Shown here: piece by piece, positions 6,903 to 64,000 of the stretch
Layout of the letters: each line of letters opens with the position of its first letter
How positions within the stretch are numbered: position 1 is the stretch's first letter
IMG/VR virus record: IMGVR_UViG_3300030041_000009
Location: 62,001 to 126,000 of that record
Direction: 5' to 3' (one strand)
DNA length: 64,000 nucleotides
Program-made: the position numbers and the translations under genes
The notes under the pieces: generated by a model
The model's database searches: none
The model's input: only the letters and a program-made list of their open reading frames with translations
What the model was told of the DNA's origin: nothing

Positions 6903-6939
6903 TATTTTTAATTTATTTTTATTTATATTATATATAAAA

Positions 6940-7000
6940 TTATGTTATTGATAATTTATGTTATTGATAATTTATGTTATTGATAATTTATGTTATTGAT
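6940..7000. repeat. 16-bp tandem repeat ttatgttattgataat, about 3.8 copies, reiterating the 3' end/stop of the 6988..8346 gene
   Basis: Units at 6940, 6956, 6972 and a partial unit at 6988. Confidence 0.9.
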
Positions 7001-12580: not shown

Positions 12581-13327
12581 ATGCTAGATAGGTTTAAAAA
12601 TTTTGAAAAATATAGAAATTTTAATGAAGAAGCAGATTATTTTCACAATCATTTTTATTTAGCTATGAAGGAGGGATTAATTCATTCTGTTGATTATGAC
12701 TTTTTTTGTGAAAAATTAGATAATTTAATAAAATCATATAATATTAAATATGAAATAAAAAAATTAGAAGGATATATTTCATTATCAATTGATATTTCAA
12801 ATGTAAATAAAAAACAATTTAATAAAGAATTGACTAGTTTTATGCATAATATGGGATATTTTAAACCTAGTATAATTGATAATAATGGATTAGAAATAAA
12901 AAGTATAATGATATCAAAAGATACAATATTTAATATAACATTTCAAAAAAGATTTGATGTACCTGATGGAACACCTGATATATTATATCATGCAACAACA
13001 AAATATTATTACGAAAAAATTAAAAAAATAGGATTAGTTCCTAAATCTCAAAATATGATATCTAATGATGTAGATAGAGTATATTTAACTGACAATTTGT
13101 CAGATGCTAAAGAATTTTGTGCAGAAAAAAGAAAATTTTTTAAAAATAAATATGATAAGACAGAATTATTCAATATGAATATCGACGAATGGGTAATATT
13201 AGAAGTTGATATTTCTTCTATTCCTGATTTTAAATTATATAAAGACCCTAAAATGAAAAATTCTTATTATACATATGAATCAATATTAAGTTATGCAATA
13301 AGAGTAAAAGAAAGAGTTAATTTTTAA
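12581..13327 (+). CDS. ADP-ribosyltransferase-fold (Tpt1/KptA-like) protein
   Basis: LYHAT...I.K.GL.PK...RVYL...DP....YYTY pattern; paralog of 39806 and 40518. Confidence 0.6.
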   Translation: MLDRFKNFEKYRNFNEEADYFHNHFYLAMKEGLIHSVDYDFFCEKLDNLIKSYNIKYEIKKLEGYISLSIDISNVNKKQFNKELTSFMHNMGYFKPSIIDNNGLEIKSIMISKDTIFNITFQKRFDVPDGTPDILYHATTKYYYEKIKKIGLVPKSQNMISNDVDRVYLTDNLSDAKEFCAEKRKFFKNKYDKTELFNMNIDEWVILEVDISSIPDFKLYKDPKMKNSYYTYESILSYAIRVKERVNF

Positions 13328-13382
13328 AAAATATATTATAATTAAATTTTTTATATATAAGAGAAATATAAAATAATTAAAA

Positions 13383-15866
13383 ATGAGATATATTTACACT
13401 CCTAAATTTGATGGTACTTTTACAATGAGTTGGTTAGGTACTCCAACGTATACAGATGAAATATCTACTCAAATTCGTGATATTAAAAATTTTTCTATCG
13501 TTCCATTAAAAAGCATATCATCAATTACAAAATTTACAGATATTGTAAAAGGAGAAACTAATGATCATTATTTCAAAAAATATTTTTCTTATAGCAATAC
13601 AAGAAGTGGTATAAGTTATAGTGAGTATTCTCCTATTACAGGAATTACACAAGATTATTGCTCATTAAATAACTTATATTTAAATTTAGCTTATTATAGA
13701 ATTGATGCTGATACTACTACAATACCAGCACTTACAATAAATACAATTGTAATCGAAGGAACTTATGATATTGAACAAACAGATACAATTGTTAATATAC
13801 CAGATAATGAATTTATATTATTTACCCCAAAAGATATTTATAAAGTTTTCAAATTAACTGGTTATGAAATATATGGATCAAATACTAATAATTTACAAAT
13901 TAAATATAGATTCACTCAAGATAATGGTAGAACATATACGCCTTGGGAAAATTTAACAACAGAAAATATATCAACTGTAAAAATAAATCCAATTAGATTT
14001 GCACAAGTTGAGTATTCAGTTTCTAAAATAAATACTGGAACAACATCTAAAATTTATGATATTATATTATTAGGAGATTTTCAAAATATTAATAATAATT
14101 ATCTTAAAACTAATAGATATGGAGTTAGAGAGGATTGTGCAGTTTCTTATCCTGCAGTAAATACTGGAACTACAATTTCAAATTCAACAGATAGTGGTAC
14201 AAATTCAGTTTGTTTAAATGGTATAACATCATATAAAGGTGATAGTAAAACTCCATTAGATTATAGTAAAGATTGGGTGACAAAAGGATTAAGTTGTTAT
14301 ATATCAGGTAATGTTATACCAAGTCTAAGTTCACAAAGTAATACAACTGGATTAGATTCAACTCAAACAGCAGCATCACAAGGCATATTTAATCCTTATG
14401 CTGGACAAAAAATAGGAGATTGGTATACATATTTATCAAATACAGTAGGTAAAATATTTGGATGGACAGTTGATTATCATTTAACAGATCCTGACGGTAA
14501 AGGAATAGATAGTATATTACATGAATATCAATTATTTAATATAGTAGATACACAAAAAATAAAAATAATTGTACCTGAAAATAATTTTCCAGATAATCAA
14601 GTTCAAATAAATGAATATATGTTAGATATGATGGATACATTTCAAGTTATTATATTAAAAGACGAATTTCATAATGCATTTGGAATAGAAAAAAGACCAT
14701 TCCAAAAAGATATTATATATTTTTGTCAAGCAAATCGTATGTATAGAATTAAACATGCTCAAGTAAAAAGAGATATTATGTATATGGGTGTTTATTATAA
14801 TGTTGTTCTTGAAAAATATGAAAAACTTGCAAATGAAACTAATGTTTCTAATGCATCAAAAAATCTTATTGAATCATTAACAAATAATAATACTATAGAT
14901 TCTTTATTTGGCGGAGAAATAAGAGAACAAGAAGATAAAATTGCAAATAAACAATTAAAACCTATAACACACGAAGTTTATAGATTAATTGTTAATCCAA
15001 AATTAGAGATAATTAAAAAAGATATCTATAATTCATTAAAAGATATAAAAATAGCAGATAGCTATTATAATTTATCATCATTATCTTCTGGTACAACCGC
15101 AGTTACTTATACATATAAAGATTCAAATTTGAATTTTAGTGATAATAGAGCATTTAATGTGTGGTTTAATTTTAATAATAGTTTTGATCCAAATAAGGCA
15201 ATTGATGAAAATATATTTAATTCTTATTATGTTAGTAATAAAAGTTATTTTGAATTTATAAACAACTATGATTCAATTAATAATAAAGGATATAAATTAT
15301 CTTACGCAAATAATAATATAACATTGACTATAAATAACATAAATTATAGTTTACCAATAACAGGATTAACAACAAATATGTGGTATGGTTTAACTGTAAA
15401 TTTAGATAATAGACAAAGAACAATAAGTTTAGATTTATTTAAAAGAAGATATAATTATAAAATAACAATGTTTACACCTAATTATAAAAGTGTTATATTA
15501 GATAATACAAATATAAATGACATATCGTATTATACATCAAATGGATATAGACCAGTTAAAAATACTGAAATTGCTGATAAATTAACTGACACAAGTTTAT
15601 ATAATATAGCGTCAATAAAATATATTGATGAATATGAAGGAGTAACTGTACCATTAAATACATTTAATGTTGATCAAAATATAATAATAAATTCATCTAA
15701 TATAAAATTGACAAATATAAGGATATATGATGATGTTATTCCTGATGAATCTAAATCTAATTTATTATTACAACGAGTAGTGCAAGATTCTAATAATTTA
15801 ATATTAGCTGATAATGCAACTAAAGAATTGTATACATCAAATATTTATAATAATAGATGGGAATAA
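13383..15866 (+). CDS. Neck/head-closure protein (T4 gp14-like core with extra domains)
   Basis: G..VDY..D.ILHEY..FP..DMMD.F...K.EF..AFG..KRP..KDIIYF...RMY.I resembles gp14. Confidence 0.55.
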   Translation: MRYIYTPKFDGTFTMSWLGTPTYTDEISTQIRDIKNFSIVPLKSISSITKFTDIVKGETNDHYFKKYFSYSNTRSGISYSEYSPITGITQDYCSLNNLYLNLAYYRIDADTTTIPALTINTIVIEGTYDIEQTDTIVNIPDNEFILFTPKDIYKVFKLTGYEIYGSNTNNLQIKYRFTQDNGRTYTPWENLTTENISTVKINPIRFAQVEYSVSKINTGTTSKIYDIILLGDFQNINNNYLKTNRYGVREDCAVSYPAVNTGTTISNSTDSGTNSVCLNGITSYKGDSKTPLDYSKDWVTKGLSCYISGNVIPSLSSQSNTTGLDSTQTAASQGIFNPYAGQKIGDWYTYLSNTVGKIFGWTVDYHLTDPDGKGIDSILHEYQLFNIVDTQKIKIIVPENNFPDNQVQINEYMLDMMDTFQVIILKDEFHNAFGIEKRPFQKDIIYFCQANRMYRIKHAQVKRDIMYMGVYYNVVLEKYEKLANETNVSNASKNLIESLTNNNTIDSLFGGEIREQEDKIANKQLKPITHEVYRLIVNPKLEIIKKDIYNSLKDIKIADSYYNLSSLSSGTTAVTYTYKDSNLNFSDNRAFNVWFNFNNSFDPNKAIDENIFNSYYVSNKSYFEFINNYDSINNKGYKLSYANNNITLTINNINYSLPITGLTTNMWYGLTVNLDNRQRTISLDLFKRRYNYKITMFTPNYKSVILDNTNINDISYYTSNGYRPVKNTEIADKLTDTSLYNIASIKYIDEYEGVTVPLNTFNVDQNIIINSSNIKLTNIRIYDDVIPDESKSNLLLQRVVQDSNNLILADNATKELYTSNIYNNRWE

Positions 15867-16642: not shown

Positions 16643-18244
16643 ATGATATCAATAAAAGTTGGATTTAACGTTAGTGAAGAGGGTAAACTTAAAATATTAA
16701 ATCGTCAGAAACAGTTTTCATATTTCTTTCGTAAACTTTATAAACATTATGATAAAATTAATGATAAAGAATATATTACTAAATTAACTAAAATATATGG
16801 TTTGAGTGTTTACGAGTCTAACTGTTTAATAATTGATGTTAAGACAAAATTTAAGCAAATTCAAACAAATAAAGATAAATTATCACAGGAAATACTTGAT
16901 TTACAAGATGATATAAAAGAATTACAATCAAAAATAAAATTAACCAAAAAAGAAACAAGGAATCTATTTAAATATCAGAAAAACTTAAGTTATAAAAATA
17001 GAAATTTATCAAAGGATATTACTTTCGGTACAAGAAAACTACTAAAAGAAATATCCTACTTAAATAATGATAAAAAGGAAAATAAAAACACTATAATTAC
17101 TAAAACAGATGAATATCATTCGAATAGAATCCTTCCTTTGAGTCTTTACGGATCTAAATGTGATCCTAATTCTAATAGATTTTTTGAATTTGATTTTACT
17201 AATAATCAAATCATTTATAAAATGAACAGCGAGAATAAAATTTATATCAATTATGTAGTTAAAGGTAATTATAAGAAACAATTGAAGGATCTTCAATTAA
17301 TTAAAGACTTAAATATATTACCTATTTCAGTCAAGTTAGATCATGAATATCTTTGTATTACAGTTGATAATGAAATGATTAATGGTGAACCTTTTGATTA
17401 TAAAACTTACATCAAGGAAATCAAAGAAAAGAATAATGGTAAGTACGACAAAAACATTTACATTAAACATAAACAAGAACAAACATCACGAAAACTTGTA
17501 GGCAAAAATCAAAATAGATTTGCTGCAGTTGATTTAAATCCTGATTATATTGGTTTAGTAATCTTAGATAAAACATCAAATGATGAAGTTAAAGTAATTG
17601 ATAGTAAATGTTATGACTTAAGTGAGTTGATGAAAAAATCAGGTAAAGATGTTACCGTAGACGAAAGTCTTTATCTAACCAGAAAAAGAAAACATGAAAT
17701 CGGTAACATTTACGTTAAGATATTTGATATAATAACTCACTACAAGTGTGGTTATTTTGTGATGGAAGACTTAAACTTTAAATCAAATAGTCAGGATGAA
17801 ATGTCAAAAGAAGTTCGTCGTAAAATAAATAATTGTTGGAACTTAGGCTTCCAAACAAATTTAATAAATAAACATTGTGATAATAATGGATTAATATTAA
17901 TAAAAGTTAATCCTTGTTATTCAAGTTTTATCGGAAATATAAATTACTCAGTATTCGACCCTGTTGCAGCAGCAACTGAAATCGGAAGAAGAGGAGCTTA
18001 TAAATATGATAAGAATGGTTTTTATCCAAAATTTACAAGTACAATGCTGAACACAGTGGTTGAAAGATTTATTAATTCTTTTCCTGATGTTTCAGTTGTT
18101 AAAGATTGTGAAAACTGGGTAAGCCTTTATAAACTATTCAAAAAGGCGGGAATTATATACCGTTGGCAGCTAACCGATATAAAGCCAGTTGACTGTTCTA
18201 GCAAAAATACTAAAAGAAACCATTGGAAAGTGTATACTTTTTAA
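16643..18244 (+). CDS. tnpB: TnpB RNA-guided nuclease (large, lacks Zn finger)
   Basis: RuvC motifs AVDLNP, VMEDL, VNPCYSSFIG..DPVAAA.EIGRR; downstream of tnpA. Confidence 0.85.
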   Translation: MISIKVGFNVSEEGKLKILNRQKQFSYFFRKLYKHYDKINDKEYITKLTKIYGLSVYESNCLIIDVKTKFKQIQTNKDKLSQEILDLQDDIKELQSKIKLTKKETRNLFKYQKNLSYKNRNLSKDITFGTRKLLKEISYLNNDKKENKNTIITKTDEYHSNRILPLSLYGSKCDPNSNRFFEFDFTNNQIIYKMNSENKIYINYVVKGNYKKQLKDLQLIKDLNILPISVKLDHEYLCITVDNEMINGEPFDYKTYIKEIKEKNNGKYDKNIYIKHKQEQTSRKLVGKNQNRFAAVDLNPDYIGLVILDKTSNDEVKVIDSKCYDLSELMKKSGKDVTVDESLYLTRKRKHEIGNIYVKIFDIITHYKCGYFVMEDLNFKSNSQDEMSKEVRRKINNCWNLGFQTNLINKHCDNNGLILIKVNPCYSSFIGNINYSVFDPVAAATEIGRRGAYKYDKNGFYPKFTSTMLNTVVERFINSFPDVSVVKDCENWVSLYKLFKKAGIIYRWQLTDIKPVDCSSKNTKRNHWKVYTF

Positions 18245-49782: not shown

Positions 49783-51591
49783 AGTTAATAGCTATCAGTT
49801 TTAATATAATATATAAACTTTTATGATAAAAACTGATATAATAATTTTATTATATAGTACAAATATACTATTAAATTTTGATTCTACCAAATAAACGATT
49901 TAAATAAATGTTAACTATTAAATTAAAAATAAAAGAGTGCTTACAAGCAGAGATAATAGATCAATATTGTTCTGACTACACTGGTTTGTTTTATACTCTT
50001 TATAATCATTTTGATTTAATTGATGATGATTATATAAAATCACTATTAAATAATTCTGTGTTAGACAAATCCATGTTTGATTGTTGTATTTCTGATGTGA
50101 AAACAAAACTTAAACAGCACGAAGCAACCAAAGAAAAGAAATCAAAAAAGATAATTGATATTCAGAAATGTCTTGATAATAACGAATTCAAAACAAAAAA
50201 GGAAAAACGTAAAAAATATAATTTAATAAATAATCTAGCAAGAATTAAACGAAATATAAACAATAATATTACATTTGGTGGTAAAGCACTACAACGTGAA
50301 ATCACGAAATTACATTTAAATATTTATAAAACTGAGCTACAGCTAACAAAGATTGATATTAAATCAACAGATTACAAGAAATTTCTTGAATATAAGAAAG
50401 AATTAATAGAAAGGTTAGGGCTCAAGAAATTAGAGTTCACATCAAAACGTAAATTAGGAATTTATTTAATCGGACGTGCCTGTGAAAAAGGTAACAGAAA
50501 AATTGATTTCGATCTAATTAATAATAAAATCACTTTCAAACCATCAAGAGATTTTAAAATTGATATCACTTTTAAAACTAACGGCAAAAAACAAAAAAAT
50601 AAATTAATTAAAATTCAAGAAATGTCTAACCTGAATTTAATGCCAGTGACCATAAGATTATCAAACGAATATATTCATTTATCTTATGACGAAGAGTTAT
50701 TAAATGGTTATGAATTCAATCAATTGGACTGCAAGAAAGAACAGTTACTTGCGTTAAGCAAAGAAAGTAAAAAGGAAATTTATATAAAGCATAAGAATGA
50801 ACAAAATGATAGAAAAAAAGTAGGTAAGCTATCAAATCGTTACATGGCGGTTGATTTAAATCCAAAGTTTATCGGTTTAAGTATATTTGATGACATTAAT
50901 GATGAGCAGAAATTAATTCATGTTCAGTGCTTTATTTTATCTGAGTTAAGTACGAAATTAAGTTTAAGCTCTTCAGACAAGAAACAAGTTAAACAAAATG
51001 ATAAAAGAAAACATGAAATAAAAGAAGTCTGGAAACAAATATTCATGATGTGTAAGCACTTCAGAGTGTATAATTTTGTGATGGAAGATCTTGATTTTAA
51101 AGATAAACAATCAAAAGATACAGTAGGTAAAGAGTTAAATAAACAAACTAAAAATCTATGGCATCGAACTTTAACGACCAACTTGATTACTAAATATTGT
51201 AATGAAAATGGCTTAAATAAAATAGAGGTAAACGCTGCTTATAGTAGTTTTATCGGAAATATGATACATACCTTCTTTGACCCAATTTCATCTAGCATTG
51301 AAATTGGCAGTAGAGGGATGAATAAATTTAAAAAAGGTAGTTCTATATACCCGTGTATGAATTTAATAAATCAAGAGAAATTGTTTTATCTACTTGGTGA
51401 GAATATCAACACAACACAGGATAATTGGATTCAATTATATAGAAAGACCAACCAACTGAAGTATCGGAACATGTTATTAAAAGATGATGTGTTAATAGAC
51501 TATCACTTAGGAAATTGTAAAAGTAAAGTTAGAATTGTTACCCAACAAATCTAATAAAATACTACAAATTACTATATTTTAGTTACCTCAT
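49783..51591 (+). mobile_element. Non-autonomous tnpB-only element (IS200/IS605/IS1341- or IS607-derived), 1809 bp
   Basis: TCAT at both junctions (49779-82, 51588-91); removal restores the ORF; subterminal inverted repeat 49793-49802 / 49829-49838. Confidence 0.85.
49908..51554 (+). CDS. tnpB: TnpB RNA-guided nuclease (large, lacks Zn finger)
   Basis: MAVDLNP, VMEDL, VNAAYSSFIG..DP; homologous to 16643. Confidence 0.85.
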   Translation: MLTIKLKIKECLQAEIIDQYCSDYTGLFYTLYNHFDLIDDDYIKSLLNNSVLDKSMFDCCISDVKTKLKQHEATKEKKSKKIIDIQKCLDNNEFKTKKEKRKKYNLINNLARIKRNINNNITFGGKALQREITKLHLNIYKTELQLTKIDIKSTDYKKFLEYKKELIERLGLKKLEFTSKRKLGIYLIGRACEKGNRKIDFDLINNKITFKPSRDFKIDITFKTNGKKQKNKLIKIQEMSNLNLMPVTIRLSNEYIHLSYDEELLNGYEFNQLDCKKEQLLALSKESKKEIYIKHKNEQNDRKKVGKLSNRYMAVDLNPKFIGLSIFDDINDEQKLIHVQCFILSELSTKLSLSSSDKKQVKQNDKRKHEIKEVWKQIFMMCKHFRVYNFVMEDLDFKDKQSKDTVGKELNKQTKNLWHRTLTTNLITKYCNENGLNKIEVNAAYSSFIGNMIHTFFDPISSSIEIGSRGMNKFKKGSSIYPCMNLINQEKLFYLLGENINTTQDNWIQLYRKTNQLKYRNMLLKDDVLIDYHLGNCKSKVRIVTQQI

Positions 51592-54317: not shown

Positions 54318-54857
54318 TTAAATATTGACATTTTTTAATGATATTAATTTTAATTTTCTTTGATCAATTCTAATTCTATCATTAAGATTTATGATAGTTT
54401 TTTCATAATCAATTCCTTCTTTTCTTCTGTAAAAAATTCCAGTTAGTTCATCTCGTCCTGATTTTTTATTTGTTAACTCTTTATAGAAAAAAATTTCTCT
54501 TGACTTAAAGAATTCTAATTTACGACAACCTTTTGTACTCATTATATCATCAACTACTAATTTACCATCAATATAAAATTTATTAATATTAAATTGAGTT
54601 GGACTAAATTCACTAGTAACATTATATTTTATCATAGCAGGACCATACAAATTATGAAGTTTACCATGATTTAAGTAGTACTCATAGTCATCAAATAATA
54701 TATGAGTAATATCCTTCAAATTGAATTCAATGTACTCATATAAAGAATAAAATGACTCAAAATCTTTTTTATATAATCTACCTGTTACGGAATCTATAGA
54801 TAAAAAAGAATCAAAATCAATCTTACATTCAACATCTAAAAATTTATACATTATCAT
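54318..54857 (-). CDS. Protein with LH..GPA motif and RKxKL tail
   Basis: GKLHNLYGPAMI; QRKLKLISL. Confidence 0.55.
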   Translation of the reverse strand: MIMYKFLDVECKIDFDSFLSIDSVTGRLYKKDFESFYSLYEYIEFNLKDITHILFDDYEYYLNHGKLHNLYGPAMIKYNVTSEFSPTQFNINKFYIDGKLVVDDIMSTKGCRKLEFFKSREIFFYKELTNKKSGRDELTGIFYRRKEGIDYEKTIINLNDRIRIDQRKLKLISLKNVNI

Positions 54858-55122
54858 TTAATAACTTATTTAATTTATATTTTCTTGCATCTTGATTATC
54901 TCCAAAATATTCATAAAAATAAAAATAAACACTATATTCATCATATTCATCATCTAATGAAAATGATATTTCACTAATTTTATCATTAAGTATAATTGTA
55001 ATAACACTATCATATATATGAGTTAATTTATAATATTTTCCTTTTTCTAATTCAGGAAAATTATTAAGAGTTGTATTTAATGTCTTTTTACAAAAATATA
55101 ATTCATTAATCTTAGGATGCAT
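54844..55122 (-). CDS. Distant member of the array family
   Basis: YFCKK...KGKYYK...FYEYFG...RKYKLNKL. Confidence 0.65.
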   Translation of the reverse strand: MHPKINELYFCKKTLNTTLNNFPELEKGKYYKLTHIYDSVITIILNDKISEISFSLDDEYDEYSVYFYFYEYFGDNQDARKYKLNKLLNDNV

Positions 55123-55366
55123 TTAATAACTTATTTAATTTTTCTTTTCTTTCTTCTTTAATAGTTCCAAAATATTCATAAAAATACAAATAACTCATAT
55201 GATTCTCTAATGAGAACACCATTTCACCAATATTAGAAATTATAACTACGTCACCATGATGACGATCTGAAACTTTATAATGTTTTCCTTTTTCAAAATA
55301 GTCATTATTAAATAAAAATTTCATTGCTTTCTTGCAATAATAATATTCATTAATCTTTGGACGCAT
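55112..55366 (-). CDS. Distant member of the array family
   Basis: YYCKK...KGKHYK...FYEYFG..ERKEKLNKL. Confidence 0.65.
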   Translation of the reverse strand: MRPKINEYYYCKKAMKFLFNNDYFEKGKHYKVSDRHHGDVVIISNIGEMVFSLENHMSYLYFYEYFGTIKEERKEKLNKLLNAS

Positions 55367-55649
55367 TTTCTAACTCACTTTTTAAATAATTAGCTAATCT
55401 TTGAATTTTATAAGCATCTTCAGGTTTAAAAATAAATTCATCAAATGCGCCATACCTACATCTATAACCAAAAATATATTTAATACCATATTTTAATCTA
55501 TTCCAAAATGATCTTCTATTTAATAATACATGAGCATAACATATAGGATCAATTTTACCTGATTCTGTTATATCTTCTTCATATAAAAATATAAGTTGAT
55601 GATCAGTTGAATGACAACTACAAATTAATATTTCTTCTTTATTTTTCAT
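55350..55649 (-). CDS. Phage hypothetical protein
   Basis: CSCHS..H...FW.RLK..IKYIFG. Confidence 0.55.
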   Translation of the reverse strand: MKNKEEILICSCHSTDHQLIFLYEEDITESGKIDPICYAHVLLNRRSFWNRLKYGIKYIFGYRCRYGAFDEFIFKPEDAYKIQRLANYLKSELENASKD

Positions 55650-55723
55650 GTTCTAATATTTTTTTTTATTTTTTTTTTTCTGTATTTTTCTTACAGTAAA
55701 CTTTATCTCTTCTTTTGTAATTA

Positions 55724-56008
55724 CTAACATTCTTTAATTATTTTTTCTAATTTATTTTTTCTAAATTCTTTTAAATCACAAAAATATGTATCAAAATCAT
55801 AATCTTCCATTCTTGGGGTGAACCAAAATGAATACCAACCATCACCATCACAACCATAACCATCATTAGTGTATTTTATTACAATAATATTATTATAATC
55901 TTTTTTCTCGTAAATAAAATATGAATAATTTTTTTTAAAAATCAATAGTTTATCAAACTCTCTGTAACAGTCCTTTATGCAAAAAACTTTATCGCCAACT
56001 TTATACAT
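55724..56008 (-). CDS. Distant member of the array family
   Basis: KVGDKVFCIKD...YF..KEFRKNKLEKI. Confidence 0.65.
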   Translation of the reverse strand: MYKVGDKVFCIKDCYREFDKLLIFKKNYSYFIYEKKDYNNIIVIKYTNDGYGCDGDGWYSFWFTPRMEDYDFDTYFCDLKEFRKNKLEKIIKEC

Positions 56009-56324
56009 TATTAATTATATTTTCTAATTTTTTCTTTCTTTTATTCTTAATCCAATCAGTTCTATTAAACTCAAATACAGATGGTATAATACTATGATCA
56101 TAATCAGTCATGATAATGTTACAATTTATTAAATCTAACCAACAATATGATATTCCTTTTTCTACATATCCATAAAATCCAGATATATATTTATTTGGTA
56201 TCTTAGGTATTTCAGATTCTGCTATTATTCTAAATTCATTTATTTTATTTGTAGGCTCAATATCTAAATTGAAACTAAAATAAATAAATTTACAATCATA
56301 AAACCATTCTTCTATCTCTTTCAT
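56001..56324 (-). CDS. Small RKxKL-tagged protein
   Basis: Ends KRKKKLENII. Confidence 0.55.
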   Translation of the reverse strand: MKEIEEWFYDCKFIYFSFNLDIEPTNKINEFRIIAESEIPKIPNKYISGFYGYVEKGISYCWLDLINCNIIMTDYDHSIIPSVFEFNRTDWIKNKRKKKLENIINNV

Positions 56325-56373: not shown

Positions 56374-58008
56374 TTATGTTTTTAAAACTTTTATAGAATC
56401 TGTAAAGTGCTTAGGTAATATATTAGAATTATATTTTAATAAATCTGAAAAGTTTGAGTCTAATATAAACGTATCGCAGTAATCTGTTTCACTACGAATT
56501 CCTCTACCTACTTCTTGTATTGTTTGAACACATGCATTCCAGCTATACCATTCAGGCATCATTTTTTGTCTTGCTTTAATTTTTTTACTACCCAAATTTG
56601 CGAATGATATTTTTAACACTATTTGAAAACGAGCTAATTCATCATCTAAAGAAATTCCTTCCATCATAGATGGACTTACTAAAACTGTTGGAGCTGTACT
56701 TGTTAAATGTTTTTCAAGAATTTCATTTCTATCTTCAGTAGTGTGAAATAATAACCTTTCATCCATAATATTTTCTTTTAACCATTCTGTTATTTCATAA
56801 TTTGATGTGTGAATTATTCCTTTTTTGTTTTTATATTTAGCTAATATTTTTTTTATCCAAGGTATCTGATTCTTAAAAGTCTCTTCTTTACTATAAAAAG
56901 ACATTTTACCAAGTTTCATATAAAATATAGGATGATTTTTTAATTCAAAAGGAGAATCCATTTCATGATAACTTGTTAATTCTTCATCTAATCCATTAAT
57001 GAAACTAAACATTTTAGAATCGAGTACAGAAGCAGACATAAAAATTATATGATCGTATTTAGACCATACATATTGATTTAGGTACTCATAAACGAAAATA
57101 TGTTCAGTTACCAACTCTATCCCACTATAATTTTTTTCACTCTTATTTTTATTGATATCAAGAACTACATTATCTGGATCATTTTTATGTGAATCAAATA
57201 AATGTTTAAACGATAATAGTTTACTATCAATATTTTGTAAATATTTAGATAACTCTACTTTTTGTTTTGATTTTGATGATCCAGCAATATCAGATTCAAA
57301 TTGAGTTCTTTTTTTCTCTAACATTGGTATTAACTTTCTTTCTAAAAATTCTAAATATTTATCTAAAAATTTAATTTTTGAAATATATTTGCTATCAATC
57401 TCTTCAATTTCTTTTAATCCAAATCCACATCTTTTTAAAGTTTTTGAACTTAATTTTGAGGAAAGATAGGATGAGAAGGTTTCTTCGAATGATTGACACT
57501 CATCAATTATAAGTACATTACCATCTCTTCTTTTTAAAATATCAGGTTGAAATAATGATAATGTATCAAATAGATGAAAATTACTCAAACCTATATCTCC
57601 AGATATCCAGGAATTTTTAGCAATGTCATATGGACATTGATCACAATGTTTTTTCATTATAGCACAGAGTTCTTTAGCTGTACCGCAATCACAATCAAAA
57701 TCTTTACAATAATAGTTAGATTTGCCTCTATAATCATTTATGAACGGAAAATCTCTGATATACTGGCCTTGAAGTACCTTCGATGCTGTAAGAATATCAA
57801 ATTTGGCATCTGGATTCACGAATCCTTTATACCAATTGGCTAGCATTATGACCATGAATGACTTACCAACCCCAGTCGGCAAATTTTCTAAAATAAAACG
57901 TTTACCTGTCAATATACTATTTTTAATAAAATTTAGTCCATCAATTTGGTAAGATTTTGGTTCGTATTTGAGAGGAAAAAATATTTTTTTGTCGTCTATT
58001 TGAATCAT
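56374..58008 (-). CDS. dinG: DinG/XPD-family helicase with Fe-S cysteines
   Basis: PTGVGKS, NYYC..C..C..CPY, IIDECQ, SAS, EGISL, Q.VGRGIRS.TD. Confidence 0.85.
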   Translation of the reverse strand: MIQIDDKKIFFPLKYEPKSYQIDGLNFIKNSILTGKRFILENLPTGVGKSFMVIMLANWYKGFVNPDAKFDILTASKVLQGQYIRDFPFINDYRGKSNYYCKDFDCDCGTAKELCAIMKKHCDQCPYDIAKNSWISGDIGLSNFHLFDTLSLFQPDILKRRDGNVLIIDECQSFEETFSSYLSSKLSSKTLKRCGFGLKEIEEIDSKYISKIKFLDKYLEFLERKLIPMLEKKRTQFESDIAGSSKSKQKVELSKYLQNIDSKLLSFKHLFDSHKNDPDNVVLDINKNKSEKNYSGIELVTEHIFVYEYLNQYVWSKYDHIIFMSASVLDSKMFSFINGLDEELTSYHEMDSPFELKNHPIFYMKLGKMSFYSKEETFKNQIPWIKKILAKYKNKKGIIHTSNYEITEWLKENIMDERLLFHTTEDRNEILEKHLTSTAPTVLVSPSMMEGISLDDELARFQIVLKISFANLGSKKIKARQKMMPEWYSWNACVQTIQEVGRGIRSETDYCDTFILDSNFSDLLKYNSNILPKHFTDSIKVLKT

Positions 58009-59729: not shown

Positions 59730-59996
59730 ATGGATAAACAGAATATTAATATTGGAGATAAATTATTATGCAAAAATAGTTATTATAATTATACTGAAGT
59801 TTTTTATAAAGATAGAGAATATGAAATAGTTAATACTAACATATTTTATAGTAGTAATTTTTATTCATTAAAAGAAAAAAATAGCAAAAATTTATTATAT
59901 CTACGTAAAGTTGATTTTTATGATGTTTTTTATACTAAACAAGAAGAAAGAAAAATAAAATTAAACAAATTAAAAAATGACGAAAAAGAATATTAA
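59730..59996 (+). CDS. Array paralog 1
   Basis: QN.N.GDKLLCK ... FYTKQEERKIKL. Confidence 0.8.
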   Translation: MDKQNINIGDKLLCKNSYYNYTEVFYKDREYEIVNTNIFYSSNFYSLKEKNSKNLLYLRKVDFYDVFYTKQEERKIKLNKLKNDEKEY

Positions 59997-60300
59997 TTTA
60001 GGAGATAAGTTATTATGTAAAAAAGATTTATTTCAAAATTTAATTAGTGATGATAAATTAATAATATTTTCTCATTTTATAAAAGATAAATATTATTCTA
60101 TTGTTGATATAAAAATAATAGATGATAAATATGCTTATAAGAATACATGTGATCATATATTTGGACAAGATGATTATATTTATTATATAAATGGAGAAAT
60201 GAATAAATCATGTTCATTTTGGTCTGAAAGTTTTTTTCATGATTATTTTTATGAAAAAAAAGAATTAAGAAATAAGAAATTGCAGAAAATAAATGGATAA
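59977..60300 (+). CDS. Array paralog 2
   Basis: Same terminal motifs. Confidence 0.8.
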   Translation: MTKKNINLGDKLLCKKDLFQNLISDDKLIIFSHFIKDKYYSIVDIKIIDDKYAYKNTCDHIFGQDDYIYYINGEMNKSCSFWSESFFHDYFYEKKELRNKKLQKING

Positions 60301-60586
60301 ACAGAATCTTAATATTGGAGATAAATTATTATGCAAAAATGATTTAAAATCATTGGTATCTAATAATACTTCATTATTATTTTTTAAAAAAGGTAAATAT
60401 TATGTTGTTGATGAAATTAGATTAATTAATGATATTTTTGTGGATTATAATGAATATTTTTATTATATAATTGATGATAATAATGAACGATATTCATTTT
60501 GGATGGAAAGATATTTATATACTTATTTTTATACTAAAAATGAAATTAGAAGCATGAAATTAAATGAAATAAATGAAGGATCATAA
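60293..60586 (+). CDS. Array paralog 3
   Basis: Same terminal motifs. Confidence 0.8.
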   Translation: MDKQNLNIGDKLLCKNDLKSLVSNNTSLLFFKKGKYYVVDEIRLINDIFVDYNEYFYYIIDDNNERYSFWMERYLYTYFYTKNEIRSMKLNEINEGS

Positions 60587-60842
60587 TTTTAAAGTAGGAG
60601 ATAAATTATTATGCAAAAAAGATTATATTCATCATAAGATATCTATTCATAAAGGGAACGAATATATTATAAGTGATAGTTTATTTGAGACTGAATATTA
60701 TACTTTTATTTATATAATTGATGATAATAATGTAAAGGTAGAAGTTCAGTATGAAAAAGATATTTATGAATTTTTTTACACTGAGAAGGAAGTTAGGAAT
60801 ATTAAATTAAAAAAGTTGGGTAATGAAGGAACAGAATCTTAA
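60573..60842 (+). CDS. Array paralog 4
   Basis: Same terminal motifs. Confidence 0.8.
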   Translation: MKDHNFKVGDKLLCKKDYIHHKISIHKGNEYIISDSLFETEYYTFIYIIDDNNVKVEVQYEKDIYEFFYTEKEVRNIKLKKLGNEGTES

Positions 60843-61110
60843 TATAGGAGATGAATTAATATGTAAACGTATATTTCATCCAAATTTTGAATATTATATA
60901 CTAAATTCATGTTATACTGTTTATGATATTAAATTTTTTAATATTGATAATAAATTTTTTAATATTGATAATGCATATTATTATATGACCATAGGAAATG
61001 AAAAAATGAATATTGTTTGTTCATATGAAGATATTTATACTTATTTTTACACAAAAAACGAAACTAGAAAAATTAAATTACAAAAACTTCATGAAGAATC
61101 AAAATTTTAA
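60823..61110 (+). CDS. Array paralog 5
   Basis: Same terminal motifs. Confidence 0.8.
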   Translation: MKEQNLNIGDELICKRIFHPNFEYYILNSCYTVYDIKFFNIDNKFFNIDNAYYYMTIGNEKMNIVCSYEDIYTYFYTKNETRKIKLQKLHEESKF

Positions 61111-61375
61111 TATAGGAGATAAATTATTGTGTAAAATTGATGTTAATAAATCATATCTGACATTAACGAAAGGTGTAGAATATATAATTTTGAGTGCTGA
61201 CTTTGATGTACTTTTGAGTGCTGACATTGATGTACTTTATTATAAATATAATATAATAGATGATACCAATAAAGATTTCTATTATATAGAAGAATTTGAT
61301 GATTATTTTTATACTAAAAATGAAGTACGAAAAATTAAATTAGAAAAATTAAAAAATGAAGAAGCAGAATATTAA
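61091..61375 (+). CDS. Array paralog 6 (probable start 61091, MKNQNFNIG)
   Basis: Same terminal motifs. Confidence 0.8.
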   Translation: MKNQNFNIGDKLLCKIDVNKSYLTLTKGVEYIILSADFDVLLSADIDVLYYKYNIIDDTNKDFYYIEEFDDYFYTKNEVRKIKLEKLKNEEAEY

Positions 61376-61625
61376 TATTGGAGATAAGTTATTATGTAAG
61401 ATTAGTTTTTTATCAAATTCTACATATATTATAAAAGGTAAATATTATTATATTAAATATATTGATATTATTAATGTAGCTCGTAAAGATTATTATTTCT
61501 ATTATTTAGACGATTTCGAATCATTGGTATGTTGTGATGAAAAAGAATTTTGTAAATATTTTTATACTAAACAAGAAGAAAGAAAAATTAAATTAGAAAA
61601 ACTTTATGAAGAAGCAGAATATTAA
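61356..61625 (+). CDS. Array paralog 7
   Basis: Same terminal motifs. Confidence 0.8.
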   Translation: MKKQNINIGDKLLCKISFLSNSTYIIKGKYYYIKYIDIINVARKDYYFYYLDDFESLVCCDEKEFCKYFYTKQEERKIKLEKLYEEAEY

Positions 61626-61881
61626 TGTAGGAGATAAATTATTATGCAAAAAAAATCTTTTTAATTCAGAAAGTACATATCTTATTGAATTTGAATATTA
61701 TTATGTTTGTGAAATTACTCCAACTAATAATAATTATACTGATTATATTTATATGCTTATATGTGAACAATATCAACCTGTTAATTTTAGATATTACGGA
61801 GAATTTTGTGAATATTTTTATACTAAACAAGAAGAAAGAAAAATCAAATTAGAAAAACTTTATGAAGAATCAAAATCTTAA
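61606..61881 (+). CDS. Array paralog 8
   Basis: Same terminal motifs. Confidence 0.8.
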   Translation: MKKQNINVGDKLLCKKNLFNSESTYLIEFEYYYVCEITPTNNNYTDYIYMLICEQYQPVNFRYYGEFCEYFYTKQEERKIKLEKLYEESKS

Positions 61882-62137
61882 AGTAGGAGATAATTTATTA
61901 TGTAAATATAATATAATTAATATAAATAAAAATTTCAAAATAGACAAATATTATGCTATGATATCAATTTATATTATTTCTAATACTATAAGCGGTGTGG
62001 ATTTTTATTATTATTATTTATTTGATGATGATGATAATTTAATATTATTTTGTGGTGAAGAAGATTTATATGAATATTTTTATACTAAACAAGAAGAAAG
62101 AAAAAGAAAATTAGATAAAATAGAAAATTATGAATAA
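61862..62137 (+). CDS. Array paralog 9
   Basis: Same terminal motifs. Confidence 0.8.
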   Translation: MKNQNLKVGDNLLCKYNIININKNFKIDKYYAMISIYIISNTISGVDFYYYYLFDDDDNLILFCGEEDLYEYFYTKQEERKRKLDKIENYE

Positions 62138-62396
62138 TTTTAATGATGGTGATAAAATATTATGTAAAAAGGATTTAACTTATTATGGTAACCATATTAT
62201 AGAAGGTGATTATTATATTTTTCATGATAATATGTTTAGTGGTATTTTTAATGATTTTTACTGCTGTTATATAAGTGAATCTAATAATATATTTTCATAT
62301 TATTTAACTGAACATGATTTAGTTGGTCATTTTTTTATGAAAAATGAGATTAGAAAATTAAAATTAGAAAAACTTTATGAAGAAACAGAATATTAA
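62130..62396 (+). CDS. Array paralog 10
   Basis: Same motifs; MNNFN subtype. Confidence 0.8.
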   Translation: MNNFNDGDKILCKKDLTYYGNHIIEGDYYIFHDNMFSGIFNDFYCCYISESNNIFSYYLTEHDLVGHFFMKNEIRKLKLEKLYEETEY

Positions 62397-62628
62397 TGTA
62401 GGAGATAGATTATTATGTAAAGAGGAGATTGATAAAATATTTATTAAAGATAAATATTATTATGTAGATGATATTAAAAATTTTTCAACTGATTATAGTG
62501 AATATTTTTATGATTTAAGATCAGAATTCAATACAATATTACCATTTTTTAGTGAATCATATTTACATCAGTATTTTTATACTAAACAAGAAGAAAGAAA
62601 AATCAAATTAGAAAAACTTTATGAATAA
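62377..62628 (+). CDS. Array paralog 11
   Basis: Same terminal motifs. Confidence 0.8.
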   Translation: MKKQNINVGDRLLCKEEIDKIFIKDKYYYVDDIKNFSTDYSEYFYDLRSEFNTILPFFSESYLHQYFYTKQEERKIKLEKLYE

Positions 62629-62887
62629 TTTTAATGAAGGTGATAAAATATTATGTAAAAAAGATTTAATAGCTAATTATAGTACACATTTTATAGAATG
62701 TAAATATTATATTTATCATAAAATTCTGAATGATTCATTTAAAGGTTTTGCCTGCTGTATATTTAATGAATCTAATGGAATATATCCATATTTTTTAAAT
62801 AAAAATGAATTACTAAATCATTTTTATACTAAACAAGAAGAGAGAAAAATTAAATTAGAAAAACTTTATGAAGAATCAGAATCTTAA
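62621..62887 (+). CDS. Array paralog 12
   Basis: Same motifs; MNNFN subtype, core similar to paralog 10. Confidence 0.8.
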   Translation: MNNFNEGDKILCKKDLIANYSTHFIECKYYIYHKILNDSFKGFACCIFNESNGIYPYFLNKNELLNHFYTKQEERKIKLEKLYEESES

Positions 62888-63140
62888 TGTAGGTGATAAG
62901 TTATTGTGTAAAAAAAATTTAAATGAATTATATGCAAGTTTTAATAAAAATAAATATTATATTGTTTATGATATTAAATTATTTGACAATAATACTGATT
63001 ATTGTTATTATATAGAATTTGATAAAAAAAAATATTATTCTTTTAGATATAGCGTTAGATTTTTTTATGAACATTTTTATACTAAACAAGAGGAGAGAAA
63101 AATAAAATTAGAAAAACTTTATGAAGAAACAGGATATTAA
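62868..63140 (+). CDS. Array paralog 13
   Basis: Same terminal motifs. Confidence 0.8.
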   Translation: MKNQNLNVGDKLLCKKNLNELYASFNKNKYYIVYDIKLFDNNTDYCYYIEFDKKKYYSFRYSVRFFYEHFYTKQEERKIKLEKLYEETGY

Positions 63141-63387
63141 TGATGAAGATAAATTATTATGTAAAAAAAATCTTCTAGTTGGAGCAAATAAATATTTATA
63201 TGTTGATAATTATTATATTGTTATGGTAGTATACGGTCCTTATGAATATTGTTATTATTTTAATGATGAAAATGATAGAATATTACCATTTTCATTTAGC
63301 ATAAAAGAGATGTCTGAACATTTTTATACTAAACAAGAAGAAAGAAAAATTAAATTAGAAAAAATTTATGAAGAATCAGAATCTTAA
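63121..63387 (+). CDS. Array paralog 14
   Basis: Same terminal motifs. Confidence 0.8.
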   Translation: MKKQDINDEDKLLCKKNLLVGANKYLYVDNYYIVMVVYGPYEYCYYFNDENDRILPFSFSIKEMSEHFYTKQEERKIKLEKIYEESES

Positions 63388-63631
63388 TGTAGGAGATAAG
63401 TTATTATGTAAAAAAGATTTAACAACATCATATTCAATATATCATAAAGATAGATATTATATTGTTCATTTTATTATTAATTATGATGATGATTATCAGT
63501 ATTTGATATCTGATGATAAAAATGCTTATTCATCTTTTAAACGTGATGAAGAATATTTATATACTTATTTTTATAGAAAAAATGAGATTAGAAAAATTAA
63601 ATTGAAAAAATTGAATAATATTTTTAATTAA
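63368..63631 (+). CDS. Array paralog 15
   Basis: Same terminal motifs. Confidence 0.8.
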   Translation: MKNQNLNVGDKLLCKKDLTTSYSIYHKDRYYIVHFIINYDDDYQYLISDDKNAYSSFKRDEEYLYTYFYRKNEIRKIKLKKLNNIFN

Positions 63632-63632
63632 A

Positions 63633-63664
63633 TTAGGTTATACCAAATATTTACTTTACTTTTG
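63633..63664 (+). promoter_or_regulatory. Bacteroidota-type promoter upstream of the Cas7-like ORF
   Basis: TTAG 63633-36, 20 nt, TACTTTTG 63657-64. Confidence 0.55.
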
Positions 63665-63696: not shown

Positions 63697-64000
63697 ATGA
63701 AAAAAGTAAAGAACATTTTATTTAAAATGGAATTAGAAGGTAATGGTGTTGTTAACTGTGATAGTAATGGACAAAAATGGATATGGAATGAAATTAGTGG
63801 TGGAAAGTATGAAACTGATAATAATTTAATATTTGCAAAAAAAAATATATATCAGAAAAGTAATGGTGAATATGATTATAAAATAAAAATTTCTAGTAAT
63901 TGTTTAAGACATAATATTTTTATTGATGATATTCCATTTCAATCTCCAAATATATTGCATAATAATTATTTACTTGTGTCAATGTTGGCTTCTCCTGCAA
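63697..64000 (+). CDS. Putative Cas7/RAMP-like protein, truncated at window edge (not in ORF track)
   Basis: MKKVKNILFKMELEGNGVVNCDS...NNLIFAKK...KIKISSNCLRHNIF resembles the Cas7 (DevR/Cst2) N-terminal pattern N...KK...iS..alR. Confidence 0.55.
   Translation, partial: MKKVKNILFKMELEGNGVVNCDSNGQKWIWNEISGGKYETDNNLIFAKKNIYQKSNGEYDYKIKISSNCLRHNIFIDDIPFQSPNILHNNYLLVSMLASPA

What the first reader, a model, noticed from the sequence alone, without database searches (positions are those of the whole stretch)
63697..64000. Unannotated Cas7/RAMP-like ORF immediately after the array, with a DinG helicase nearby
Seen: an ORF missed by the track, with its own host-type promoter, reading ...GVVNCDS...NNLIFAKK...ISSNCLRH. 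Knowledge: Cas7 (DevR/Cst2) N-termini carry N..KK and iS.qalR motifs, and type IV-A systems pair Cas7 with DinG. Inference: start of a phage-encoded minimal class 1 or RAMP-based RNA-guided module. No CRISPR array lies in this window, so any guide source is downstream or non-canonical; a link to the adjacent repeat/variable transcript is speculative but testable. DinG (5.7 kb away, other strand) may be an ordinary phage helicase.
Basis: partly seen in the sequence, partly recalled or inferred. Interest (0 to 1): 0.75.

Follow-up and report, generated by a model that had tools for sequence, protein, structure and literature searches.

The report
Megaphage CRISPR-Cas operon, cas7 first
The open reading frame at the window's end is a real Cas7 gene that opens a four-gene, Cas8-less type I CRISPR-Cas operon with a 37-repeat array, carried by a very large peat-soil phage and aimed at a smaller rival phage; it is a phage-borne variant of a known kind of system.

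Summary
An ATG at window 63697 opens a 357-aa ORF that runs 770 bases past the window's end.

- **Cas7 identity.** It is homologous to Cas7fv, the backbone of type I-F2/I-Fv Cascade: NCBIfam E 2e-19, PDB 5o6u E 1e-7, AlphaFold model Z 23.3 to Cas7fv.
- **Operon.** Downstream lie a Cas5fv-like gene (identified by fold only), a Cas6b-type gene, a canonical CRISPR array and a Cas3. The array has 37 repeats of 36 nt and 36 spacers of 29-31 nt. The Cas3 has HD and helicase domains and no Cas2 domain.
- **What is missing.** There is no Cas8 or Cas11. Cas1, Cas2 and Cas4 were not found here or in four complete relatives.
- **Carrier.** The host record is a 256-kb fragment, about 36% complete, of a tailed megaphage from peat. 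Its promoters are of the Bacteroidota type.
- **Conservation.** All 36 related phage loci analysed keep cas3, cas7 and cas5 wherever the locus reaches that far. Most also keep cas6 and an array.
- **Target.** Three of the six newest spacers match, at 29-30 of 30 bases, a smaller tailed phage whose terminase resembles those of Bacteroides prophages.
- **Type IV-A idea.** It fails: the nearby DinG is a generic helicase and is not linked to the module.

The protein family is already catalogued as Pfam PF28157. The system as a whole is a phage-borne variant of type I-F2.

The parts
63657..63664 (+). TACTTTTG, a TAnnTTTG box (Bacteroidota-type -7 promoter element) 40 nt upstream of the cas7 ATG. 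It is the candidate promoter of the operon.
   Evidence: The motif is at L001 657-664. Genome-wide it peaks at -40..-31 from start codons, 17 hits against about 4 per bin. The same motif lies upstream of the first cas gene in 13 of 25 relatives. That this consensus is the Bacteroidota one is from my own knowledge. Function is not shown.
63697..64000 (+). The first 101 codons of cas7 (Cas7fv-like). The full gene is 357 aa at L001 697-1770 = genome 125697-126770, and ends 770 bases beyond the window.
   Evidence: NCBIfam NF040577 Cas7fv E 2.1e-19. PADLOC Cas7fv 4.4e-13. PDB 5o6u_C Cas7fv E 1e-7. Precomputed Pfam PF28157 'Cas7fv-like'. AF2 model pLDDT 86.6, Z 23.3 to 5o7h_E against about 13 for other Cas7s.
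64000..64000 (+). Pointer to the rest of the operon, which lies beyond the window's last base. Coordinates are in L001; L001 + 125000 = genome, and L001 + 63000 = extrapolated window coordinate.
- cas5 (Cas5fv-like, 299 aa): 1781-2680
- cas6 (Cas6b-type, 234 aa): 2664-3368
- CRISPR array: 3470-5877 (37 repeats of 36 nt, 36 spacers of 29-31 nt), then one more spacer and a degenerate repeat to about 5943
- cas3 (HD + helicase, 765 aa, no Cas2 domain): 5997-8294
   Evidence: - **cas5:** no sequence hit. AF2 pLDDT 86.5 with six inserted helices at residues 109-206. Best folds are Cas5fv 5o6u_F (Z 8.6) and 9g44_B, then other Cas5s.
- **cas6:** TIGR01877 E 6e-22 and PADLOC Cas6b 6.5e-36.
- **Array:**
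- **cas3:** TIGR01596 above its cut-off, cas3_core 4.7e-24, PADLOC Cas3fv 6.5e-66.
- **Conservation:** the same gene set is found in relatives.

Best explanation
**What it is.** The ORF is the first gene of a phage-borne, adaptation-less, Cas8-less type I CRISPR-Cas interference operon. Its order is promoter, cas7, cas5, cas6, CRISPR array, cas3.

**Likely mechanism** (inferred from the solved Shewanella type I-F2 system and from the gene set here):
1. The operon is transcribed from a Bacteroidota-type promoter.
2. Cas6 cuts the repeats and leaves an 8-nt 5' handle, predicted to be GUCUCAAC.
3. Cas5 caps that handle. Its six-helix insertion reads the PAM in place of a large subunit.
4. Five or six Cas7 copies coat the 30-nt guide.
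5. The complex forms an R-loop on matching DNA.
6. The Cas7 backbone recruits the HD-helicase Cas3, which shreds the target.

**Biological role.** The carrier is a very large tailed phage from peat. Its target is another, smaller tailed phage or prophage of the same, probably Bacteroidota, host. The system therefore serves phage-against-phage competition or anti-prophage warfare, not host defence.

**Shown:** gene identities, the array, conservation across phages, absence of Cas1/2/4, spacer-to-target matches, and co-occurrence of both phages in one sample.

**Inferred:** complex assembly, the processing site, Cas3 recruitment, DNA degradation, and how new spacers are acquired.
For: - **Cas7fv homology and fold:**
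- **Cas5fv-like fold with a six-helix insertion:**. The Cas5fv architecture is described in PMC6546366.
- **Cas6 and Cas3 identities:**
- **Array:** 37 repeats.
- **No extra subunit:** no other ORF lies between the cas genes.
- **Phage origin:** IMG/VR virus record, 36% complete. Tail spike and tail fibre PHROGs. Relatives include two complete genomes with terminal repeats.
- **Conservation:** all 36 related phage loci analysed keep cas3, cas7 and cas5 wherever the locus reaches that far, most also keep cas6, and 19 of about 26 distinct ones have an adjacent array of period 66.
- **Targets:** spacers 2 (29/30), 3 (30/30) and 6 (29/29), plus one spacer of a relative (28/30), hit one 9-kb contig. 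That contig carries terminase, portal, protease-capsid fusion and tail genes. Its TerL is 62% identical to one on a 4.2-Mb Bacteroides contig.
- **Co-occurrence:** one metatranscriptome holds both a cas5 fragment and the spacer-3 protospacer with the target's own flanks.
- **No self-match of spacers**.
- **Array turnover:** arrays of close relatives differ at the cas6-proximal end while sharing an ordered subset of spacers.
- **Mechanistic model:** the type I-F2 structure paper PMC12956352.
Against: - No experiment was done. crRNA processing, complex formation and interference are all inferred.
- Only 4 of 36 spacers have a known protospacer. Five other spacer scans found only the array itself.
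- Cas5 is identified by predicted fold only. Z is 8.6, with 116 residues aligned and Foldseek TM 0.29, and there is no sequence hit.
- The RNA-library contig for cas5 could be carried-over DNA.
- The record is about 36% complete. Absence of cas1/cas2 in this phage rests on complete relatives, not on its own full genome.
- The host assignment is indirect.
Confidence: 0.85

Rival explanations
1. A type IV-A-like system: a Cas7-Cas5-Cas6 complex that works with the nearby DinG helicase to silence targets without cutting them.
For: The 544-aa helicase 5.7 kb upstream matches a PADLOC 'typeIV_DinG' model at 5.8e-52. It is kept in the same place in the closest syntenic relative.
Against: A Cas3 with HD and helicase domains belongs to the operon in every relative. 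Cas7 and Cas5 match the I-Fv proteins far better than type IV ones. NCBIfam places the helicase with generic YoaA/DinG (about 1e-18) and matches Csf4 only at 8e-5. No homologue lies within 10 kb of cas7 in any other relative. It is on the opposite strand, behind about 16 unrelated genes.
Confidence: 0.03
2. A decaying, non-functional remnant of a bacterial CRISPR-Cas locus picked up by the phage. It has lost its adaptation genes and its array is frozen.
For: No Cas1, Cas2 or Cas4. Seven IMG/VR contigs of this phage from different samples carry identical spacers. Most spacers have no known target.
Against: All four genes are intact, and the family has 602 representatives at the 50% identity level, mostly viral. 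The gene set is kept across phages that share only 26-53% Cas7 identity. The cas6-proximal spacers match a co-occurring phage perfectly. Related phages show spacer turnover. Cas3 HD and helicase signatures score above or near curated cut-offs.
Confidence: 0.05
3. The system binds but does not degrade. It would silence genes of the host or of a resident prophage, or use Cas3 mainly for host takeover and nucleotide scavenging through a prophage target in the chromosome, much as ICP1 does against PLE.
For: The target's terminase is closest to prophage genes in Bacteroides chromosomes, so the target may be integrated in the host. Huge phages have been reported to target host genes (PMC7162821).
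Against: An HD nuclease domain is present and conserved. The hit genes are virion structural genes on both strands, which fits destruction better than regulation. No spacer matched any bacterial sequence held here.
Confidence: 0.07

Closest known systems
Type I-F2 (formerly I-Fv) CRISPR-Cas of Shewanella putrefaciens CN-32 (PDB 5O6U, 5O7H, 9G44)
   Same: Four-protein interference set without Cas8 or Cas11. The Cas7 has the same fold (Z 22-23, 22% identity). The Cas5 has a RAMP core plus an inserted six-helix domain. The Cas3 helicase best matches the Cas3fv model (PMC12956352, PMC6546366).
   Different: - Cas6 is of the Cas6b type, not Cas6f.
- Cas3 has no fused Cas2.
- There is no cas1.
- Repeats are 36 nt and spacers 30 nt, against 27-28 and 32.
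- No GG/CC is seen next to five protospacers.
- Cas7 carries an extra Lys-rich C-terminal helix.
- Cas7 scores 70 bits against an equivalog cut-off of 200, and Cas5 is not detected by sequence.
- The carrier is a phage, not a bacterial island or plasmid.
Type I-F CRISPR-Cas of Vibrio phage ICP1
   Same: A phage-encoded type I-F-related system used against a rival genetic element in the host (PMC10161043).
   Different: ICP1 has Cas8f/Csy1, Cas1 and Cas2/3, and acquires its own spacers. The system here has none of these and sits in a far larger phage of a different host phylum.
Adaptation-less CRISPR-Cas systems of huge phages (Al-Shayeb et al. 2020, PMC7162821)
   Same: Huge phages carry arrays and effectors without Cas1, Cas2 or Cas4, and their spacers target competing phages.
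   Different: The type I example described there is a I-C variant that lacks Cas6 and has another helicase in place of Cas3. A Cas7fv/Cas5fv-based module with Cas6 and Cas3 is not mentioned in the text I could search.
Type IV-A3 systems that acquire spacers in trans (bioRxiv 10.1101/2023.06.23.546257)
   Same: A mobile-element-borne class 1 system without its own adaptation module. It is a precedent for borrowing host Cas1-Cas2 (title and abstract).
   Different: It uses DinG instead of Cas3, is carried on plasmids, and has different Cas7 and Cas5 families. Here no host array with a matching repeat was found.

Membership tests
[quoted passage not shown] | Cas3 with an HD nuclease and an SF2 helicase | tested here: met
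   cas3_HD TIGR01596 at 62 bits, above its 43.45 cut-off. cas3_core E 4.7e-24. Pfam Cas3_HD, DEAD and Cas3-like_C_2.
[quoted passage not shown] | Cas7 and Cas5 RAMP proteins next to a CRISPR array | tested here: met
   The array starts 101 nt after cas6.
Type I-F2 (I-Fv) | Backbone protein of the Cas7fv/Cas7f2 family | tested here: met
   Homology E 2e-19. Fold Z 23.3, well above all other Cas7 types. It is a distant member: 70 bits against the NCBIfam equivalog cut-off of 200.
Type I-F2 (I-Fv) | Cas5fv/Cas5f2 with an added six-helix domain that replaces the large subunit | tested here: inconclusive
   The predicted fold fits best to 5o6u_F (Z 8.6), and six helices are inserted at residues 109-206. 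Only the RAMP core superposes, and no sequence model detects the protein.
Type I-F2 (I-Fv) | No Cas8 and no Cas11 | tested here: met
   No further ORF of 50 aa or more lies on the coding strand between cas7 and cas3. The same compact layout is seen in relatives.
Type I-F2 (I-Fv) | Cas6f-type endoribonuclease | tested here: not met
   The best models are Cas6b (6.5e-36) and generic Cas6. There is no Cas6f hit.
Type I-F2 (I-Fv) | Cas2-Cas3 fusion, with cas1 in the locus | tested here: not met
   The HD domain starts at about residue 16, and the Cas3fv profile is matched only from position 320. Pfam Cas1 and Cas2 are absent from the record and from four complete relatives.
Type I-F2 (I-Fv) | Repeats of about 27-28 bp, spacers of 32 bp, GG PAM | tested here: not met
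   Repeats are 36 nt and spacers 30 nt. The 5' flanks of five protospacers are TTT, ATA, TTT, TTC and TCT, and none has CC or GG on either side. The sample is small.
Type IV-A | Csf-type effector with a dedicated DinG (Csf4) and no Cas3 | tested here: not met
   Cas3 is present. The helicase matches Csf4 only at 8e-5, against generic DinG/YoaA at about 1e-18. It is not linked to the module in relatives.
Pfam PF28157 'Cas7fv-like' | Hit to the family model | tested here: met
   The precomputed annotation lists PF28157 for this protein and all 120 listed homologues, and names the family. Atlas clusters of the family are 58-84% viral. The model is not in the local Pfam copy.

The most novel reading that the evidence does not exclude
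These megaphages may carry a distinct, phage-specific subtype of type I CRISPR-Cas. It would combine a I-F2-like Cas7/Cas5 core, a Cas6b-type nuclease, a stand-alone Cas3, 36-nt repeats, a non-GG (possibly T-rich) PAM, and a Lys-rich Cas7 tail that may stand in for Cas11.

Its arrays keep gaining spacers although neither the phage nor any bacterial genome searched supplies a matching adaptation module. That would imply acquisition in trans by an unrelated host Cas1-Cas2, or a new route altogether.
Probability: 0.25. Interest if true: 0.75.

Novelty: new variant of a known kind. Interest (0 to 1): 0.5.

Why it matters
- **Ecology.** It adds a clear, well-anchored case of CRISPR-based warfare between phages. 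A peat megaphage, probably about 700 kb when complete, aims its newest spacers at a smaller co-occurring phage of a likely Bacteroidota host.
- **Compactness.** The module is among the most compact type I sets: four proteins, about 1,655 aa in total, and no Cas8 or Cas11. It differs from the only studied I-F2 system in its nuclease for crRNA processing, its repeat geometry and apparently its PAM. It could therefore widen the toolbox derived from I-F2.
- **Open question.** How do arrays turn over without any Cas1-Cas2 in the phage? Related phages with diverging arrays make this directly testable.

Tried and rejected
**Searches that found nothing useful**
- DNA and protein searches of the GenBank phage collection with the cas genes found nothing.
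- The array against that collection gave only chance-level hits.
- Scans for spacers 1, 7/9, 19 and 36 in viral contigs returned only the phage's own arrays. So did the scan for spacers 7/9 in JGI metagenomes.
- The array against five relatives' whole records gave no convincing protospacer.
- Spacers of all relatives against all loci held gave no cross-targeting.
- The target contig could not be extended: searches found no longer contig.

**Host and adaptation leads**
- The repeat's 3' end was searched in 185,579 species genomes. It occurs as an array only on one 'Bacteroidetes MAG' contig, which carries the same phage-type module and is probably a mis-binned phage.
- Of 401 genomes of that phylum sampled, only that MAG has the Cas7.
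- The MAG's lone Cas1 has no array beside it.

- The sigma-70 promoter and terminator scan was uninformative in this AT-rich DNA.
- Complex prediction with an RNA chain was not folded and gives no evidence.

**Weak or negative side results**
- The repeat hairpin is weak: folding energy is not better than shuffles, and only one pair covaries.
- The suppressor tRNA suggested TAG recoding, but read-through does not raise coding density.
- The 650-aa ORF after cas3 was considered as a hidden large subunit. It occurs only in the closest relative and has P-loop/DEAH-like motifs, so it was rejected.

Full report
**Observation.** The ATG at window 63697 opens a frame that stays open to the last base of the window. 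The window is bases 62001-126000 of a single 256,033-bp record with 22% G+C. In that record the ORF continues to 126770 and encodes 357 aa. In DNA this AT-rich an open frame of that length is not chance. The mechanical ORF list omits it only because it runs off the window.

**Identity of the ORF.**
- The protein matches the NCBIfam model for the type I-Fv backbone protein Cas7fv over residues 4-271, with E 2.1e-19. The score is 70 bits, below the 200-bit equivalog cut-off.
- It matches the PADLOC Cas7fv model at 4.4e-13.
- It matches the solved Shewanella Cas7fv chains 5o6u_C and 9g44_F at E 1e-7.
- An AlphaFold model built on 33 homologues (pLDDT 86.6) superposes on Cas7fv with Z 23.3 over 273 residues. 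Cas7 proteins of other types reach only about 13.
- Residues 310-356 form a long Lys-rich helix that lies beyond the Cas7fv fold.
- Public precomputed annotation already files this protein and its homologues under Pfam PF28157 'Cas7fv-like'.
- ESM Atlas clusters of that family are 58-84% viral.
- An exhaustive profile search finds 602 representatives at the 50% identity level.

**The rest of the operon.** I fetched genome 125001-141000 as L001. L001 coordinate plus 63000 equals window coordinate. Five features follow cas7 on the same strand.
- **Cas5-like gene (299 aa, L001 1781-2680).** It has no sequence-family hit. Its AlphaFold model (pLDDT 86.5) is a RAMP core interrupted by six helices at residues 109-206. 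Its best structural matches are Cas5fv (5o6u_F, Z 8.6; 9g44_B, Foldseek E 9e-4), followed by Cas5 proteins of many type I systems. A six-helix insertion is the published hallmark of Cas5fv (PMC6546366).
- **Cas6 (234 aa, L001 2664-3368).** It is of the Cas6b type (TIGR01877 E 6e-22; PADLOC Cas6b 6.5e-36).
- **CRISPR array (L001 3470-5877).** It has 37 repeats of 36 nt and 36 spacers of 29-31 nt, plus one more spacer and a degenerate repeat. Repeats are perfect at the cas6 end and mutated towards the far end.
- **Cas3 (765 aa, L001 5997-8294).** It has an HD domain starting at about residue 16 and an SF2 helicase. Its best model is Cas3fv, matched only from profile position 320, so there is no Cas2 domain.
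- **What is absent.** No other ORF sits between these genes, so there is no Cas8 or Cas11. No intrinsic terminator-like site was found across the operon.

**The carrier is a phage.** The record is an IMG/VR virus record, linear, with a CheckV completeness of 36%.
- Large ORFs in the window match tail spike, tail fibre, helicase and glycosyltransferase PHROGs.
- A 346,561-bp contig of the same phage exists.
- A syntenic relative sharing 53% Cas7 identity occurs on contigs of up to 711 kb. The complete genome is therefore probably several hundred kilobases.
- Sequencing runs that hold the locus are peat, soil, freshwater and permafrost metagenomes.
- TAnnTTTG is the -7 promoter box typical of Bacteroidota (my own knowledge). 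It peaks 31-40 nt upstream of start codons across the record, 17 hits against about 4 per bin. One copy sits 40 nt before cas7, and 13 of 25 relatives have one before the first cas gene.

**Conservation.** Forty IMG/VR loci encode relatives, at 26-100% identity.
- Every analysed locus keeps cas3, cas7 and cas5 wherever it reaches that far, and most also keep cas6. The order is either cas3-cas7-cas5-cas6-array or cas7-cas5-cas6-array-cas3.
- Nineteen of about 26 distinct loci have an adjacent array of period 66. In nearly all of these the repeat ends in GGGAATCACAAC.
- The repeats can form a weak 3-5 bp stem ending 6-8 nt before the repeat's end, with one covarying pair.
- Four complete or nearly complete relatives of 310-597 kb, two with terminal repeats, have no Cas1, Cas2 or Cas4. 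Neither does this record.
- Even so, arrays of close relatives share an ordered subset of spacers and differ at the cas6-proximal end and internally. The arrays therefore change over time.
- The seven IMG/VR copies of this phage itself have identical arrays.

**Targets.** No spacer matches the phage's own genome.
- A scan with spacer 6 found a 5.3-kb viral contig, L113. It matches spacer 6 (29/29), spacer 3 (30/30) and a spacer of the 53%-identity relative (28/30).
- A 9-kb version of that contig, L114, also matches spacer 2 (29/30).
- The contig encodes small and large terminase, portal, a protease-capsid fusion, adaptor, neck and tail proteins.
- Its TerL is 62% identical to a gene on a 4.2-Mb 'uncultured Bacteroides' contig. 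It is 53-56% identical to genes of Bacteroides salyersiae and Phocaeicola barnesiae. This points to a Bacteroidota host and a temperate-type target.
- One permafrost metatranscriptome holds a 223-nt contig identical to part of cas5, and a 543-nt contig carrying the spacer-3 protospacer with the target's own flanks. A 2025 soil metagenome holds an exact spacer-29 protospacer.
- The five known protospacers have 5' flanks TTT, ATA, TTT, TTC and TCT. None has CC or GG on either side.

**Mechanism.** By analogy with the solved I-F2 complex, Cas5 senses the PAM and the Cas7 backbone recruits Cas3 directly (PMC12956352). The most likely working is as follows. Cas6 processes the array transcript. Cas5, Cas7 and Cas6 assemble on each crRNA. 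The complex forms an R-loop on the rival phage's DNA, and Cas3 degrades it. All of these steps are inferred. Huge phages with adaptation-less CRISPR systems that target other phages are an established phenomenon (PMC7162821).

**What does not hold.** The DinG-family helicase at window 56374-58008 best matches generic YoaA/DinG models, and a homologue lies near the cas genes only in the one syntenic relative. Together with the presence of Cas3, this rules out a type IV-A reading. The upstream 'array' is a tandem family of 83-120-aa protein-coding paralogues with no Pfam match.

**Comparison and novelty.** The module works like type I-F2 and shares its Cas7, its Cas5 architecture and its Cas3 helicase lineage. 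It fails several defining features:
- it has a Cas6b-type nuclease rather than Cas6f;
- it has no Cas2-Cas3 fusion;
- it has no cas1;
- its repeat and spacer geometry is 36/30 rather than 27-28/32;
- no GG PAM is seen.

The Cas7 family is already catalogued, and phage CRISPR systems are known. I found no paper in the searchable library that describes this system. The 2022 survey of virus-encoded CRISPR-Cas systems is not in that library, so prior description cannot be excluded. I rate it a new variant of a known kind, of moderate interest. How spacers are acquired remains unexplained.

Noticed in passing
window 59730-63631 (+) and 54844-56324 (-): At least 20 tandem paralogous ORFs of 83-120 aa. 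The N-terminus is like MKxQNxNxGDKLLCKK and the C-terminus like FYTKQEERKIKLEKLYEE. None of the three members scanned has a Pfam match. The same block lies upstream of cas7 in the syntenic relative L010 but not in other relatives.
   Followed up: partly
window 56374-58008 (-): A DinG/XPD-family helicase of 544 aa. It hits a PADLOC 'typeIV_DinG' model at 5.8e-52, yet NCBIfam places it with generic YoaA/DinG. It is a caution that this PADLOC model is not specific for Csf4.
   Followed up: yes
genome 248960-249031 (-), 145044-145207 (+); outside the window: A tRNA with anticodon CTA (amber-suppressor type, called tRNA-Pyl by ARAGORN) and two tRNA-Gln. TAG ends only 16 of 348 predicted genes, but reading TAG through does not raise coding density. 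There is thus no sign of recoding in this fragment.
   Followed up: partly
L001 1624-1767 (just beyond the window's end): Cas7 carries a C-terminal Lys-rich helix of about 47 residues, confidently modelled, that lies outside the Cas7fv fold and is kept across the family consensus. It could bind the displaced DNA strand as small subunits do elsewhere. This is untested.
   Followed up: no
L001 8387-10339 (beyond the window): A 650-aa ORF directly after cas3 with Walker-A-like and DEAH-like motifs and no family match. It is present only in the closest syntenic relative (L010/L021), so it is probably not part of the cas module.
   Followed up: partly
L041/L042 versus L043/L044 (arrays at about 12726-14479): Two closely related phages share 11 spacers in the same order. 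They differ by three spacers at the cas6-proximal end and by internal blocks. The arrays therefore turn over in phages that have no Cas1-Cas2.
   Followed up: partly
L064 (JAIFNC010000057.1, 'Bacteroidetes bacterium bin_69'): A 44-kb contig of 27% G+C, binned into a bacterial MAG, carries the same cas7-cas5-cas6-array-cas3 module. It is the only array with this repeat ending among 185,579 species genomes, and is probably a phage contig binned with its host.
   Followed up: partly
window 16643-18244 and 49908-51554 (also genome 28541-29779, outside the window): Several ORFs of 410-550 aa resemble one another at their N-termini, and one looks like an IS200/IS605 TnpB-type protein to the eye. The two inside the window had no PHROG match. 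They were not examined further.
   Followed up: no
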